A DNA stretch of 63,062 nt, counting the filler, from Octopus bimaculoides (Eukaryota): NCBI RefSeq assembly GCF_001194135.2. It is 4 parts of 4 records of this genome, joined end to end, with 100 filler letters (N's around TTAATTAATTAA, not from the genome) between each part and the next. Parts side by side here need not be neighbours in the genome. Positions count along the whole stretch, not along the records: positions 1 to 23,983 come from NC_068994.1; 3 more parts are not named here. The stretch is one strand, 5' to 3'. Shown here piece by piece: positions 2,449-23,983 of this stretch. Numbering within the stretch: position 1 is the first letter of the stretch; each line of letters opens with the position of its first letter. The notes under the pieces are model-generated. The model saw only the letters and a program-made list of their open reading frames with translations. It made no database searches and was not told the DNA's origin. The position numbers and the translations under genes are program-made.

Positions 2449-3108
2449 TTACAACCAACAGAATGTAACACTCCTGCACTGTGTGTTATCGGGAAGCACT
2501 AATTCCTCAGCAATGTTGTGCAGGTCCGGTATGGTGACGTGGGCTAGGATTTCTACCCCAAAACCCCACCATTCGATTTCTCTCGACCTCTCCACTTTAA
2601 TGATCTCCACCTCGTCCTTGCATTTATATATTACCGCTGATACCAGCCATTCCATATCTATCTCCAATGGCACTCTACCGATCCTCACTCTCGCTGCCCT
2701 TCTACCGCAATATACTGGTAAAAGGGCCCACTCCTCCGTTCTCAGAGGCATGGTAGAGTATTTCTTAGCTCCTTGCTCCGTCTTGAAATACACCTTCACC
2801 GTTCCGTATTTCTTTCCTCTCATAAACAGCACAACTTCCTCTGAGATTTCCTTCAGACACTTCTCTATTACTTCGTTCTCCGCTATTTCTATTTTCTTGG
2901 AGACGACTCTTAAAGTCTTATATGTGATTATTTTCTTTTCTGCTTCTTCCATCACTTCTTTTGGTGGGTCTACCCGCAAACAGTCTCCCTCCTTCTTAAA
3001 ATATTTGAAATGCTTCTTCAAATTCTCCATTTCCACCTTCACCTCTCTCATTCCCATGTCGCCGGTTGGCCTGCCGCTGCTAGCTGCAGCAGCGTAACTG
3101 GTAGTCAT
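2449..3108 (-). mobile_element. Tx1/L1-like non-LTR retrotransposon ORF1 (gag-like), copy 1, open 219 codons, 3'-truncated
   Basis: Starts with SYAAAA. Shares GKKYGTVKVYF..A, LPVYCGRRAARVRIGRVP and IEWWG motifs with three other decayed copies in this piece; one of those has a CCHC knuckle and one lies directly upstream of a Tx1-type RT fragment. Confidence 0.65.
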
Positions 3109-4199
3109 ATTAAACCACCTCCGCTACGACTTTCAACAATAAAACAAGCAACATTTCTTAAAACAATTTCAACAAAACTTCGTCGACAACCAACTATACA
3201 GATTGCCAAATTGCTATGCGTCATGGGCAACCAGTGAATAAACCAGTGGGAGAGTCCATTTGGTAGTTTCCGAAATAGCTGTCAGATCTCATTTTATATT
3301 ATTGTAGGATTTGAAAAACAATGAGTGAAAGGCTACATTAATTAAATGTAATCCTAGATGAACACTGTCTGAAAATTAAAGTGTTCGATGGACACAGTTT
3401 GAACACTTTTGATTATATATGCCTTGTGTGCTGGGTACAGGACTGGCTTCAGGGTTGAAGTACCACAACGATCTCCAAATTGGCAAAATTGATTACGAAG
3501 AAAATCTGTCGACAAAAGCAATGAAGTGATAAAAAGTCTTCAAGGCAGAGGAAGTTCTTGACTTCGAATTATAAAAATAATATAAAAGAAGAGGAAGAGG
3601 GAAGAACAATACAACAAAAAGAACACCCTCTCCCCACCCACCCCTGAGAAAATGATTGGAAGGTAAGTCAATTTGCTGGTTAGCCAATGATATTGGCCTG
3701 TCCATCAGCTACCTTATCTTCAACTGTAGATACTAGTACATTGGCTATGTACTGTGCTGAGAAATTTGGAACAATGACCTCAGTGGTTATCTTTTTACTG
3801 TTTTCAGTCACCTGATTGGTGTACCATCTTCAGGTTTTTTTTTTGTTTTTTGTCTATCATCAGATGATTGCTGTATTTAATGTGGTATCACACTTACATT
3901 GTTATCTCTATTATTGACTTATGACTTCTTAATTTTTTAGCCTGATGATAGGTAGAATCAGTGTAGTGATTAGCAAACAATGACCATGTAGCATTTAGTT
4001 GCATCTGTTTGGATATGAAATAAGTACCTGTCAAGTACTTAAAGCACTTGGCTCCCTATGGTGCACTGGGCCATCGATTGTTTTTTTTCCCCCCTTCCTT
4101 CCACTGCACTTCACTCTAAACTGTATTTTCAGCTTCTCTGCATCCTACCTCCAGCTATTTTGTAGGCATCCACTCTTGGAGGTTCCAAGTCGGGGCTCC

Positions 4200-4395
4200 A
4201 AGTCATCCTCATCATCATCGTCGTTTAGCGTCTGCTTTCCATGCTAGCATGGGTTGGATGATTTGACTGAGGACTGGCTACACCAGGCTCCAATCTGATT
4301 TGGCAGAGTTTCTACAGCTGGATGCCCTTCCTACTGGTAACGGCCACTCTCGAAACGGTGTGTTTTACATGCCACCTGCACAAAGGCTAGTCCGG
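4200..4395 (-). mobile_element. 3' end of an RTE-related LINE/SINE family
   Basis: catcatcatcgtcgtttagcgtctgctttccatgctagcatgggttggat...ctacagctggatgcccttcct is the reverse complement of a (GAT)n-tailed RTE-type 3' end. A truncated relative lies near 33640. Confidence 0.55.
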
Positions 4396-5104
4396 CGGTA
4401 CTGGTTGGTTTCTTTAGGGTGCTACCTGTCTGCCCCTTTTCACATTTTGGTGCACCATATCGTGTTCCCTGAGGAAAGCTCCTTTGAACTATCAATACTT
4501 CAGCATTGCNNNNNNNNNNNNNNNNNNNNNNNNNNNNNNNNNNNNNNNNNNNNNNNNNNNNNNNNNNNNNNNNNNNNNNNNNNNNNNNNNNNNNNNNNNN
4601 NNNNNNNNNNNNNNNNNNNNNNNNNNNNNNNNNNNNNNNNNNNNNNNNNNNNNNNNNNNNNNNNNNNNNNNNNNNNNNNNNNNNNNNNNNNNNNNNNNNN
4701 NNNNNNNNNNNNNNNNNNNNNNNNNNNNNNNNNNNNNNNNNNNNNNNNNNNNNNNNNNNNNNNNNNNNNNNNNNNNNNNNNNNNNNNNNNNNNNNNNNNN
4801 NNNNNNNNNNNNNNNNNNNNNNNNNNNNNNNNNNNNNNNNNNNNNNNNNNNNNNNNNNNNNNNNNNNNNNNNNNNNNNNNNNNNNNNNNNNNNNNNNNNN
4901 NNNNNNNNNNNNNNNNNNNNNNNNNNNNNNNNNNNNNNNNNNNNNNNNNNNNNNNNNNNNNNNNNNNNNNNNNNNNNNNNNNNNNNNNNNNNTTTTTTTT
5001 TTTTTTTTTTTTTTTTTTTCCCCCCTTTTAAATTTAGAAATTGCATTGACTCTTGCCACTCTAAACCCTTATAATTGTAATATTTAACTATGACTTCTGT
5101 TAAG

Positions 5105-5262
5105 GTTGCCTGGAGGCATAATATGGCCTAGTGGTCAGAGTATTGCTGTCATGTTTACAAGATTGTGGTTTCAATTCCCAGGCTGGGCAATGCGTTGTTC
5201 TTGAGCAAAGCACTTTGTTTTACACTGCTCCTGTCCCTCAGCTGCAAATGGGTAACCTTGCT
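5105..5262 (+). mobile_element. tRNA-derived SINE (family C)
   Basis: A-box-like tggcctagtggtcagag, B-box-like ggtttcaattcc, then gttcttgagcaaagcactt core. Relatives at about 52600-52735 (-) and 56900-56970 (+). Confidence 0.6.
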
Positions 5263-22434: not shown

Positions 22435-22459
22435 TGGCCAGTGGAAGGGGAGATAATTA

Positions 22460-23245
22460 AAAGTAAATGTCTAGGGAAAAATCAGTGTCCATATGTTCCC
22501 AGATGCGTTCAAAGAAATTGTCTTTTGTAAAATTTAAAATTTTCTGTCCGTTGAGTGCATTAATTTCTCGTCTTATGTGTTTTTTAGTCATAAGTCTTCG
22601 TGCATTTCAAGTAGAGGACTCCATCTTTCTGCTTCGGCTTCTTGGTCGTCTGGATCGTTTGTTGTTTCTCCTGTGAATAAACATTGTTCAGTAATTCTTC
22701 CGTGATAAAGGCAAGCTTGAGACTGTTGTTCTGGGTCGTGTACACAGGGGCTTTTTGCTGGTGAGTAGTGTGGTGTTATTTCAATTTCGCTGATAATTTT
22801 TCTCTTTACGGCGTTTATGGTACGTTTTTTTGGGGGGTGACATCTGGTCGAATTCGGACAAGTTGTATCTTGTTGATGTCTTTGGTTTGTTGTGCTCTAT
22901 GTAGATTTTACTGTAGGTGTTATCTACGTATTTGTCAATGTATGGCTTCCATATGGTTAGCCACATAAGTGGATTCAGCTCGACTTTTCCCCAGTCTTTC
23001 AGTTGAGGCATGTCTCTGTTTGTTTGGAACAGGAATAGTCTGTTTTTAAGTGCGTTTTCTTCCTGCATTACTACTCTCCATGGTTCTTGATTGGATGTTG
23101 ATAAGCAGGGTGTGCGTTTCAGAATTCGTTCGGGGTTATGTTTGATGTTTATATATGTATCAGTCCCTTCTAATATGCACTTCGCCTCCTCCACGTTGTT
23201 TGTAGTAAACCACATTTTGTCGGTATAAATAAGTGTTTTATCCAC
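22460..23245 (-). pseudogene. Unknown ORF(s) downstream of the viral-type PLA2, microsatellite-free and coding-like
   Basis: A 154-codon ORF, then a further ~80 open codons reached by a 1-nt shift in a C6A7 run, then a short MTKKHIRRE... ORF. No family recognised. Confidence 0.35.
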
Positions 23246-23487
23246 ACAAGTCCTGATGGTCCTGCGAATACTGTGTCTTTGATGAATTGTTTATCTGCTT
23301 CCCAAGTAAGCTTATTAGGGTTGGCGTAATCGATGTCATGTGCTTTTGCTGCGGCGTCTACTGCACTGAGTGGCATATCGTAAATCCTTTTGCATATATC
23401 TGTTCCTGGGCCAGTAAATTCGTGACCTGGTAAGTTGTATTCACCGCTGTACTTTTTCCTAGCGAGATGTTTCCTTATCGGAGGCAT
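23240..23487 (-). pseudogene. Parvovirus-VP1u/Polinton(adintovirus)-type phospholipase A2 domain
   Basis: MPPIRKHLARKKYSGEYNLPGHEFTGPGT...VDAAAKAHDIDY...EADKQF contains the Ca-loop (xxGPG), the D..A..HD..Y catalytic helix and the downstream AD motif. Confidence 0.8.
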
Positions 23488-23502
23488 GTGTCGAAATGGA
23501 AT

Positions 23503-23983
23503 AAAAGAAACAGATTTGGATATTCCAGATCCAATGGGGACATGTTTTGGAACTGCCAAATGTAGAAGTGTGTCTCCATCTTTGTCCAAAACATTGGGCT
23601 AGATGCCAATGTGGTTCAATAATAGGCCAACTATGACTGTGTTTCCACGGGAACAGACAATCTCACACTGAGCAGCTAGACGCCACAGACAGAAACTCTT
23701 CACTGCTGTGGTGAAAGAAACAAACATTATTGAGAACATATAAGAAACAGATTTGGATATTCCAGATCCAATGGGGACTTACTTTGGAACTGCCAAATGC
23801 AGAGGATTGTCTCCATATTTGTTCACTTTATTGGGATTGATGCCAATGTGGCTCATCAAGAGGCCAACTATGACTGTGTTTCCACGGGAACAGGCATTCT
23901 CATACTGAGCAACTGGACGCCACAGACAGAAACTCTTCACTGCTGTGGTGAAAGAAACAAACATTATTGAGAACATATAAGAA
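23503..23983 (-). pseudogene. Tandem 237-bp units, each an ankyrin-repeat exon plus a short intron
   Basis: gaaacagatttggat starts at 23507 and 23744, and gaa recurs at 23981 before the gap. Units encode ACSRGNTVIVGLL.SHIGINPN..NKYGDNPLHLAV; the GTAAGT donor is intact in one unit and mutated in the other. Confidence 0.75.

What the first reader, a model, noticed from the sequence alone, without database searches (positions are those of the whole stretch)
2449..23983. Uni-strand mosaic of transposon and viral fragments: candidate flamenco-like piRNA cluster in a cephalopod-like genome
Seen: about 20 short coding fragments from at least nine unrelated groups (Tx1/L1, CR1, Penelope, Gypsy, Merlin, piggyBac, mariner, Helitron, viral PLA2) packed into about 21 kb. 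I count 19 on the minus strand and 1 on plus. Treating them as about 18 independent insertions, a 17:1 split has a two-sided binomial chance near 1e-4. Microsatellites and SINEs, which dominate the other three pieces, are sparse here, and TE remnants in those pieces lie on both strands. Known: Drosophila flamenco and similar uni-strand clusters are built from fragmented TEs oriented antisense to one long spliced Pol II transcript. Inference: plus-strand transcription here would give a U-rich precursor antisense to nearly every element, including DNA transposons. I do not know whether this locus has been described.
Basis: partly seen in the sequence, partly recalled or inferred. Interest (0 to 1): 0.88.

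Follow-up and report, generated by a model that had tools for sequence, protein, structure and literature searches.

The report
One-strand transposon graveyard in octopus DNA
About 21 kb of octopus DNA is packed with broken pieces of many unrelated transposons and a parvovirus-like fragment, nearly all pointing the same way; this fits a small-RNA (piRNA) source locus but equally an ordinary long intron, and the sequence alone cannot separate the two.

Summary
A symmetric six-frame Pfam scan finds coding remnants only on the minus strand. With follow-up searches I count 13 tool-supported independent remnants on minus: piggyBac; Merlin x3; mariner; Helitron; a weak Gypsy RNase H; Penelope-like x2; a CCHC/ORF1-like family x3; and one parvovirus-like fragment (PLA2 + NS1). 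One Merlin piece lies on plus.

The host is an Octopus: one ORF is 89% identical to an O. bimaculoides protein. Gap 2 lies inside a single Merlin copy, so its flanks are colinear. Nothing bridges gap 1.

Strand coherence is the one structural hallmark of a flamenco-type cluster that sequence can show. Small RNAs, a precursor transcript and the genomic context are all untestable here.

I read the locus as a decayed transposon graveyard filtered by orientation relative to a plus-strand transcript.
- piRNA precursor: about 0.3
- Ordinary intron or lncRNA: about 0.35
- Chance or insertion-site effects: about 0.25

Published O. bimaculoides small-RNA data could settle it.

The parts
2452..3123 (-). 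ORF1-like / CCHC-family protein remnant, copy 1. It is the only long uninterrupted frame in the region and lacks the 3' part of its relative.
   Evidence: 89% identical to O. bimaculoides A0A0L8HDN2 over residues 1-204. The rest of that 352-aa protein, including its zinc knuckle, was not found downstream.
4510..4992 (.). Assembly gap 1. Continuity is not demonstrable.
   Evidence: N run. No element bridges it.
4993..5019 (-). Poly(A) tract on the minus strand (T27 on plus) abutting gap 1. Probably the tail of a minus-strand retroposon.
5115..5310 (+). tRNA-like SINE head (A-box and B-box order) on the plus strand. Identified by eye only.
   Evidence: Sequence read. ARAGORN and Rfam gave no hit.
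6459..7356 (-). piggyBac transposase remnant. Broken: at least 3 stops and 1 frameshift, and 3'-truncated.
   Evidence: DDE_Tnp_1_7 at E = 4e-27 and 1e-16 in two frames; 7e-29 on the stop-free segment.
7609..8446 (-). Merlin (IS1595-type) transposase remnant, copy A, spanning assembly gap 2 (7791-8290).
   Evidence: Both gap flanks are colinear with copy B at 83-84% DNA identity and 70-75% aa identity.
8883..9272 (-). ORF1-like family remnant, copy 2.
   Evidence: tblastn against copies 1 and 3: 31-36% identity, E down to 1e-13.
9929..10630 (-). Merlin transposase remnant, copy C (a different subfamily). Broken.
   Evidence: DDE_Tnp_IS1595 at E = 3e-10. 35% aa identity to copy B.
12184..13096 (-). 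Merlin transposase remnant, copy B. Broken, spread over several frames.
   Evidence: DDE_Tnp_IS1595 at E = 7e-9.
13273..13491 (-). Possible LINE apurinic-type endonuclease N-terminus. Weak evidence.
   Evidence: The only PDB match is exodeoxyribonuclease III, E = 0.78, at its N-terminus. No Pfam hit.
13672..13839 (-). mariner transposase C-terminal remnant.
   Evidence: SETMAR transposase domain at E = 8.6e-7.
13799..14293 (-). Helitron Rep/helicase remnant: the region just upstream of, and entering, Helitron_like_N.
   Evidence: 437 relatives at E <= 1e-3. Long relatives carry Helitron_like_N + PIF1 next to the matched stretch. Extent from tblastn.
14959..15069 (-). LTR-retrotransposon (Gypsy-type) RNase H remnant. 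Weak evidence.
   Evidence: RT_RNaseH_2 at E = 4e-5 and RT_RNaseH at E = 7e-5, both below Pfam's curated cut-offs.
15382..16695 (-). Penelope-like element remnant, copy B: RT-associated region plus GIY-YIG endonuclease. Broken.
   Evidence: Relative P0001 carries PF26215. GIY-YIG at E = 2e-4. tblastn.
17836..18417 (-). ORF1-like / CCHC-family remnant, copy 3, with a zinc-knuckle motif (read by eye) at its downstream end.
18800..19637 (-). Penelope-like element remnant, copy A. Broken.
   Evidence: 37-45% aa identity to copy B. P0001 aligns over 198 residues.
20586..20843 (+). Merlin-like N-terminal remnant. The only protein-level TE piece found on the plus strand.
   Evidence: tblastn against Merlin copy C: 26% identity over 99 aa, E = 1e-7. 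The alignment was inspected. No Pfam hit.
21674..21877 (-). Third copy of the 237-bp ankyrin-like repeat, on the far side of the viral block.
   Evidence: 84-85% identical to the tandem copies.
22805..23260 (-). Parvovirus-like NS1 remnant, helicase C-terminal half only. The N-terminal part is missing. There are no internal stops in the stretch that remains.
   Evidence: Parvo_NS1 at E = 8e-12. 50-71% identity to cephalopod relatives. The family profile hits AAV Rep40/Rep68 at E = 1e-11.
23281..23442 (-). Parvovirus-type phospholipase A2 domain remnant. It directly abuts the NS1 piece in another frame, and its open frame starts inside the ankyrin-like repeat.
   Evidence: Phospholip_A2_4 at E = 1.5e-7. 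35% identity to the PLA2 ORF of the cuttlefish locus L001.
23501..23983 (-). Two tandem copies of a 237-bp unit that encodes an ankyrin-like repeat. It runs off the end of the piece.
   Evidence: TRF: period 237, 89% matches. Ank_4 at E = 2e-10.

Best explanation
The locus is a decayed, nested transposon graveyard in an Octopus genome. At least twelve independent insertions from eight or more superfamilies, plus one rearranged parvovirus-like fragment, have built up and been truncated by one another.

**Shown:** their near-uniform minus-strand orientation is real.

**Inferred:** the most economical mechanism is orientation-dependent selection relative to a long Pol II transcript that reads the plus strand, left to right. 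Insertions that are sense to that transcript bring polyadenylation and splice signals, or fail to yield useful antisense RNA, and are lost. Antisense insertions persist.

**Not determined:** what the transcript is.
- An ordinary pre-mRNA intron or lncRNA: about 0.35.
For: - **Symmetric scan.** Pfam hits occur only on the minus strand (against 11, 14, 15; against 27).
- **Count.** 13:1 tool-supported remnants, p = 0.0018.
- **Independence.** DNA-level self-similarity is limited to two Merlin copies and the ankyrin-like repeat. The ORF1-like copies are only 30-36% identical and the Penelope-like copies 37-45%. Chimeric Helitron relatives match the window only in their Helitron part.
- **DNA transposons follow the bias too.** The ratio is 6:1. 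In human introns the hAT and TcMar families were among seven of eight showing antisense bias, and LTR elements showed the strongest (PMC3517506).
- **Homopolymer runs.** T-runs of 9 or more outnumber A-runs 9:1 on the plus strand.
- **CpG.** Observed/expected is 0.58 across the mosaic, with a TpG/CpA excess. This would fit germline methylation of a transcribed body (my inference). The first kilobase, upstream of the mosaic for a plus-strand transcript, is not depleted, at 1.19.
Against: - No expression or small-RNA data are available here, and no flanking sequence or annotation could be obtained.
- With 14 events and post hoc bounds, p of about 0.002 is not overwhelming if many windows were screened.
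- A few elements on plus blur the picture: Merlin at 20586-20843, a SINE head at about 5115, and a short repeat at 1972-2076.
- Pfam is insensitive to short decayed fragments, so plus-strand remnants may have been missed.
- The A-rich minus strand could itself steer later LINE and SINE insertions into the same orientation without any selection.
Confidence: 0.65

Rival explanations
1. Uni-strand (flamenco-type) piRNA cluster. A single plus-strand precursor, antisense to nearly all embedded TE and viral fragments, is processed into piRNAs that silence those families.
For: - The 13:1 orientation is likely under a 0.9 antisense bias (P = 0.58) and unlikely under intronic strengths (0.003-0.03).
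- The bias includes DNA transposons and a viral fragment in the same orientation.
- Molluscs have active piRNA pathways. Snail clusters are twofold TE-enriched, especially for Gypsy and DNA transposons (PMC6128900).
- In mosquitoes, viral fragments sit in piRNA clusters (PMC7522710, listed).
- A CpG-undepleted stretch lies at the upstream end.
Against: - No defining feature was testable.
- The prior is low: snail clusters cover 0.27% of the genome.
- Most fragments are old and heavily broken, whereas snail clusters favour low-divergence copies.
- No cephalopod piRNA cluster paper was found to compare with.
Confidence: 0.3
2. Ordinary long intron, or lncRNA body, of a plus-strand host gene. Sense-oriented insertions were purged because they terminate or mis-splice the host transcript. 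No small-RNA role.
For: - Antisense bias of intronic TEs is well documented (PMC3517506).
- On my own rough estimate, long introns make up a large share of big cephalopod genomes, so the prior is high.
- CpG depletion would fit gene-body methylation, and a CpG-undepleted first kilobase could be a promoter or first exon (my inference).
- No plus-strand coding signal inside the mosaic contradicts an intron.
Against: - The observed bias is far stronger than the 2:1 maximum reported for human LTR elements: P(>=13/14) = 0.03 at 0.67 and 0.003 at 0.55.
- DNA transposons share the bias.
I could not check those pieces.
Confidence: 0.35
3. No transcription-related cause. The bias is chance in one of many screened windows, helped by insertion-site feedback: the T-rich plus strand offers target sites that orient new LINE and SINE copies like the old ones.
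For: - p = 0.002 would recur many times among roughly 1e5 windows of a 2-3 Gb genome.
- The DNA transposons alone (6:1) give p = 0.125.
- The plus strand is 33% T against 27.5% A.
- The region bounds were chosen post hoc, and an opposite-strand repeat lies just outside at 1972-2076.
Against: - Feedback through target-primed reverse transcription cannot orient cut-and-paste transposons, Helitrons or a viral fragment.
Confidence: 0.25
4. Assembly artefact: a chimeric or collapsed scaffold that joins repeats in one orientation.
For: There are two assembly gaps, and repeats abut both of them.
Against: - Gap 2 flanks are colinear within one Merlin copy, with the expected spacing.
- The bias holds within each of the ungapped stretches, including 15.7 kb of continuous sequence (8291-23983).
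Confidence: 0.05

Closest known systems
Drosophila flamenco and other uni-strand piRNA clusters
   Same: Dense nested fragments of unrelated transposons, almost all in one orientation over tens of kilobases. An upstream non-TE stretch could hold a promoter.
   Different: - flamenco is dominated by Gypsy-type endogenous retroviruses; here DNA transposons, Penelope-like and LINE-type pieces dominate.
- No piRNA, transcript or synteny evidence exists for this locus.
Mosquito (Aedes) piRNA clusters containing endogenous viral elements
   Same: A non-retroviral viral fragment is embedded among TE fragments in the same orientation.
   Different: - The virus here is parvovirus-like (DNA virus), not an RNA virus.
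- piRNA production is untested.
- A related cuttlefish locus carries long open frames and does not look like a cluster.
Mollusc piRNA clusters (Lymnaea stagnalis, Crassostrea gigas; PMC6128900)
   Same: Same phylum. Clusters are TE-enriched, with DNA transposons and Gypsy over-represented.
   Different: - Those clusters were defined from small-RNA data and favour low-divergence copies; most copies here are decayed.
- I did not find TE strand bias discussed in that paper's main text.
Antisense-biased TE accumulation in host-gene introns (human; PMC3517506)
   Same: TE fragments oriented against a transcript that reads through them. No function needs to be invoked.
   Different: The reported bias is at most about 2:1 (LTR elements). 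Here it is 13:1 and includes DNA transposons.
Endogenous parvoviral elements
   Same: An NS1 SF3-helicase fragment and a capsid-type PLA2 domain, integrated and truncated.
   Different: - PLA2 lies upstream of NS1 on the same strand, both here and in the cuttlefish locus.
- No close relative turned up among the IMG/VR viral contigs.

Membership tests
Uni-strand (flamenco-type) piRNA cluster | Dense nested TE fragments, predominantly in one orientation | tested here: met
   13 minus to 1 plus tool-supported remnants from eight or more superfamilies in about 21 kb.
Uni-strand (flamenco-type) piRNA cluster | Abundant 24-32-nt, 1U-biased small RNAs mapping to one strand only | not testable with these tools
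O. bimaculoides libraries exist (PMC12479628).
Uni-strand (flamenco-type) piRNA cluster | One long Pol II precursor from a discrete promoter, antisense to the TEs | not testable with these tools
   The only hint is CpG observed/expected of 1.19 in 1-1000 against 0.58 overall.
Uni-strand (flamenco-type) piRNA cluster | Contains recent, low-divergence copies of active families | tested here: inconclusive
   One uninterrupted 219-aa ORF is 89% identical to a paralogue. All other remnants are broken and diverged.
Intronic antisense-biased TE accumulation | Lies within an intron of a gene transcribed from the opposite strand to the TEs | not testable with these tools
   The window's ORFs are not on record, so no flanks or annotation could be fetched. 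No plus-strand Pfam domain in the window.
Intronic antisense-biased TE accumulation | Bias of the size seen in introns (up to about 2:1) | tested here: inconclusive
   P(>=13/14) = 0.029 at p = 0.67. This is a human benchmark only (PMC3517506); the octopus value is unknown.
Endogenous parvoviral element | NS1/Rep SF3 helicase homology | tested here: met
   Parvo_NS1 at E = 8e-12. The family profile hits AAV Rep40/Rep68 at E = 1e-11.
Endogenous parvoviral element | Capsid VP1-type phospholipase A2 domain | tested here: met
   Phospholip_A2_4 at E = 1.5e-7.
Endogenous parvoviral element | Embedded in host DNA rather than a free viral genome | tested here: met
   Flanked by ankyrin-like repeats and TE remnants. 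The same window holds an Octopus TE protein.
Penelope-like elements | RT-associated region followed by a GIY-YIG endonuclease | tested here: met
   Relative with PF26215. GIY-YIG at E = 2e-4, directly downstream on the same strand. Pfam RVT_1 itself was not among the hits shown.
   No Pfam hit. From the PDB, only ExoIII at E = 0.78 for the endonuclease-like piece and nothing for the RT-like pieces. The ORF1-like/CCHC family is real, but its clade is unassigned.

The most novel reading that the evidence does not exclude
This is the 5' part of a uni-strand piRNA cluster in Octopus. No cephalopod piRNA cluster turned up in my literature searches. A plus-strand precursor would start in the CpG-undepleted first kilobase and read antisense through DNA transposons, Penelope-like and LINE remnants and a captured parvovirus-like fragment. 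That would give the animal small-RNA memory of both transposons and a DNA virus lineage.
Probability: 0.3. Interest if true: 0.65.

Novelty: new member of a known kind. Interest (0 to 1): 0.42.

Why it matters
**If small RNAs confirm it.** The locus would show that flamenco-like, strand-filtered piRNA source loci exist in cephalopods. It would also show that they trap DNA transposons and a parvovirus-like sequence. That would extend a principle worked out in flies and mosquitoes to a distant, neurally complex lineage whose genome is nearly half repeats.

**If it is only an intron.** It is still an unusually strong case of orientation filtering that includes DNA transposons, and a useful benchmark for TE-host conflict in octopus.

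**Either way.** The parvovirus-like family shared by octopus and cuttlefish, with PLA2 upstream of NS1 on one strand, is a lead for cephalopod palaeovirology.

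Tried and rejected
2. **Pfam at E <= 1 on the by-eye LINE pieces, and at first on the Helitron and mariner pieces,** gave nothing. PDB phmmer rescued mariner but not Helitron or the RT pieces. 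The endonuclease-like piece got only ExoIII at E = 0.78. Helitron was rescued by the exhaustive representative search plus Pfam on its hits.
3. **Context.** Exact look-ups of 11 window ORFs found no record, so the intron question stayed open.
4. **Segmental duplication as a source of false independence** is rejected. Only the Merlin A/B pair and the ankyrin-like unit share DNA identity.
5. **One composite Helitron carrying captured Gypsy and mariner pieces** is rejected. The idea came from chimeric database proteins, but they match the window only in the Helitron part.
6. **tRNA and Rfam scans** gave no tRNA and only sub-threshold miRNA-like hits on a palindrome.
7. **IMG/VR scans for viral relatives of the NS1 family** found none.
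8. **The short repeat at 18403-18537** has no PDB match. My guess that it is a mariner HTH domain is unverified.
9. **Run accessions SRR11869391 and SRR11869384** were not found in the literature, so the organism behind the 71%-identical NS1 relatives is unknown.

Full report
**Gaps first**

The piece has two N runs, 4510-4992 and 7791-8290. For gap 2, self-BLAST shows that 7609-7790 and 8291-8446 align in the same order and strand to 12184-12365 and 12934-13095. The identity is 83-84%. These target stretches belong to a second copy of the same Merlin-type transposon, where they are 568 bp apart, against 500 N here. The two sides of gap 2 are therefore parts of one element and are colinear. 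The frame across the gap is unknowable. For gap 1, nothing bridges it. Its right edge is a T27 run, which is poly(A) on the minus strand, and its left flank is an unclassified repeat. ORFs listed across either gap are artefacts of translating N.

**Is the strand bias real?**

I translated all six frames with stops marked X. I cut them into 800-aa chunks and scanned each against Pfam with the same threshold.

- The minus frames gave these hits:
  - Parvo_NS1, E = 1e-10
  - Phospholip_A2_4, E = 2e-6
  - ankyrin repeats
  - RT_RNaseH, E = 4e-5, below Pfam's cut-off
  - DDE_Tnp_IS1595 at two places, E = 3e-10 and 7e-9
  - DDE_Tnp_1_7 in two frames, E = 4e-27 and 1e-16
- The plus frames gave nothing at E <= 0.01.
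- As a second, independent pass, I scanned every stop-free segment of 45 aa or more at E <= 1.
  - The 105 minus segments returned the same families plus GIY-YIG at E = 2e-4.
  - The best of the 118 plus segments was E = 0.0076, for an unrelated family. That is what chance gives with that many queries.

**Naming the rest**

- **mariner.** A fragment at 13672-13839 matches the SETMAR transposase domain at E = 8.6e-7.
- **Helitron.** The fragment was invisible to Pfam and the PDB. It has 437 relatives at E <= 1e-3 in the exhaustive representative search. The long relatives carry Helitron_like_N and PIF1 immediately after the matched stretch. Its extent is 13799-14293.
- **Penelope-like.** The two RT-like blocks, 15382-16695 and 18800-19637, are 37-45% identical to each other. 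They match a protein carrying PF26215. The first is followed by GIY-YIG.
- **ORF1-like/CCHC family.** It has two diverged copies, 30-36% identical, at 8883-9272 and 17836-18417, all on minus.
- **The plus-strand piece.** The only protein-level TE remnant on plus is a Merlin-like N-terminus at 20586-20843, E = 1e-7 against Merlin copy C. I inspected the alignment.
- **Not verified.**
  - The endonuclease-like piece has only an ExoIII hit at E = 0.78.
  - The RT-like pieces have none.

**Independence and significance**

- DNA-level self-similarity is confined to Merlin A/B and the ankyrin-like unit.
- The repeated protein families are too diverged to be a local duplication.
- The public database holds predicted proteins that fuse Helitron with Gypsy or mariner domains. 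These match the window only in their Helitron part, so the neighbouring Gypsy, Helitron and mariner pieces are not one captured composite.

I count 13 independent minus remnants and 1 plus remnant. The minus set is:

- piggyBac
- Merlin A, B and C
- mariner
- Helitron
- a weak Gypsy RNase H
- Penelope-like A and B
- ORF1-like x3
- the parvovirus-like fragment

The two-sided binomial p is 0.0018. Caveats:

- The bounds were chosen after the fact.
- A short repeat just left of them (1972-2076) is in the opposite orientation to its two copies inside the region.
- A tRNA-like SINE head, read by eye, lies on plus at about 5115-5200.

Supporting asymmetries: T-runs of 9 or more outnumber A-runs 9 to 1, and the plus strand is 33% T against 27.5% A.

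**Host and the viral piece**

The 89% match places the window in Octopus. The NS1 remnant at 22805-23260 covers only the C-terminal half of the helicase, and its N-terminal part is absent. It is 56% identical to a protein of the cuttlefish Acanthosepion pharaonis and 71% identical to proteins on short Logan contigs. A profile of the family hits the AAV Rep40/Rep68 helicase at E = 1e-11. IMG/VR holds no relative.

The PLA2 remnant at 23281-23442 abuts the NS1 remnant in a different frame. Neither piece contains an internal stop.

In the cuttlefish locus L001, three long open frames lie on one strand in this order:

- a PLA2 ORF, E = 1.4e-7
- a 381-aa ORF with no Pfam match
- an NS1 ORF, E = 4e-15

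The octopus copy keeps that order but lacks roughly 2.8 kb between the two remnants. Relative to the cuttlefish unit, the breaks are one internal deletion, one frame change and one 5' truncation of NS1, with the middle ORF absent.

The block sits between copies of a 237-bp ankyrin-like repeat. The open frame containing PLA2 begins inside that repeat.

**What it most likely is**

The structure is a nested, decayed transposon graveyard. Recognised remnants cover 43% of 21.5 kb, and almost every frame is broken. The orientation filter needs a cause. The best-supported mechanism is selection relative to a long plus-strand transcript. Two identities for that transcript fit.

1. **A uni-strand piRNA precursor.**
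   - The data are likely under a 0.9 bias (P = 0.58).
   - They include DNA transposons and a viral fragment, and mollusc clusters are rich in DNA transposons (PMC6128900).
   - The prior is small: 0.27% of the snail genome.
2. **An ordinary intron or lncRNA.**
   - The prior is high.
   - The data are improbable at known strengths: P = 0.03 at the 2:1 maximum reported for human LTR elements, and 0.003 at 0.55 (PMC3517506).

These factors roughly cancel. I put the piRNA cluster at 0.3, an intron or lncRNA at 0.35, chance or insertion-site feedback at 0.25 and an assembly artefact at 0.05.

CpG observed/expected is 0.58 across the mosaic but 1.19 in the first kilobase. That fits a germline-transcribed, methylated body behind an unmethylated start, which is my own inference. 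Both transcription models predict it.

**Comparison and novelty**

The locus works like flamenco in the one respect that sequence can show. Membership of that class is untested on every defining molecular feature. I found no paper describing piRNA clusters in cephalopods. Small-RNA libraries for O. bimaculoides do exist (PMC12479628), so the question can be tested directly by mapping. As it stands, this is a new instance of a known kind of structure, and I score its interest as moderate (0.42).

Noticed in passing
window 22805-23442; L001 6894-10696: The parvovirus-like PLA2 and NS1 remnants lie in the order PLA2 then NS1 on one strand. The same order is seen in a cuttlefish (Acanthosepion pharaonis) locus, where three long open frames of 236, 381 and 481 aa are intact. 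This is not the usual NS-then-VP order. It suggests a cephalopod-specific lineage or a permuted integrated form. No relatives were found in IMG/VR.
   Followed up: partly
window 21674-21877 and 23501-23983: A 237-bp unit encoding an ankyrin-like repeat occurs as two tandem copies and a third copy on the other side of the viral block. The open frame containing the PLA2 domain starts inside the repeat. I could not tell whether the unit is a host pseudogene, a satellite or part of a larger repeat.
   Followed up: partly
window 1-1000: CpG observed/expected is 1.19 here, against 0.58 for the whole piece and 0.2-0.8 in most other kilobases. No TE coding remnant was detected in this stretch. It may be an unmethylated island upstream of the mosaic.
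   Followed up: no
window 22001-23000: This kilobase is a second stretch with undepleted CpG, at observed/expected 1.06. It overlaps the sequence next to the viral block.
   Followed up: no
window 10745-10836: A 93-bp near-perfect palindrome gives sub-threshold matches to several miRNA precursor families on both strands (31.9-35.4 bits against gathering scores of 62-106). It lies just upstream of Merlin copy C. It may be a hairpin formed by terminal inverted repeats.
   Followed up: no
window 1972-2076 (+), 14545-14617 (-), 18403-18537 (-): A short interspersed repeat occurs in three copies. It is unclassified, with no PDB match.
   Followed up: partly
window 5115-5310 (+) and 4150-4509: A tRNA-like SINE head with A-box then B-box lies on the plus strand. 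A second SINE-like repeat ending in a GAT-rich tail abuts gap 1. Both were identified by eye only.
   Followed up: no
L002 / L003 (Logan SRR11869391, SRR11869384): Short contigs from two sequencing runs of unknown organism encode an NS1 relative that is 71% identical to the window's remnant, with a second called gene upstream. The runs were not traceable in the literature.
   Followed up: partly
proteins P0056, P0116, P0139, P0151 (representative library): Public predicted proteins fuse Helitron domains with Gypsy RNase H/integrase or mariner HTH/transposase domains in one reading direction. Gene callers therefore read through same-orientation TE mosaics elsewhere too, and such mosaics may not be rare.
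   Followed up: partly
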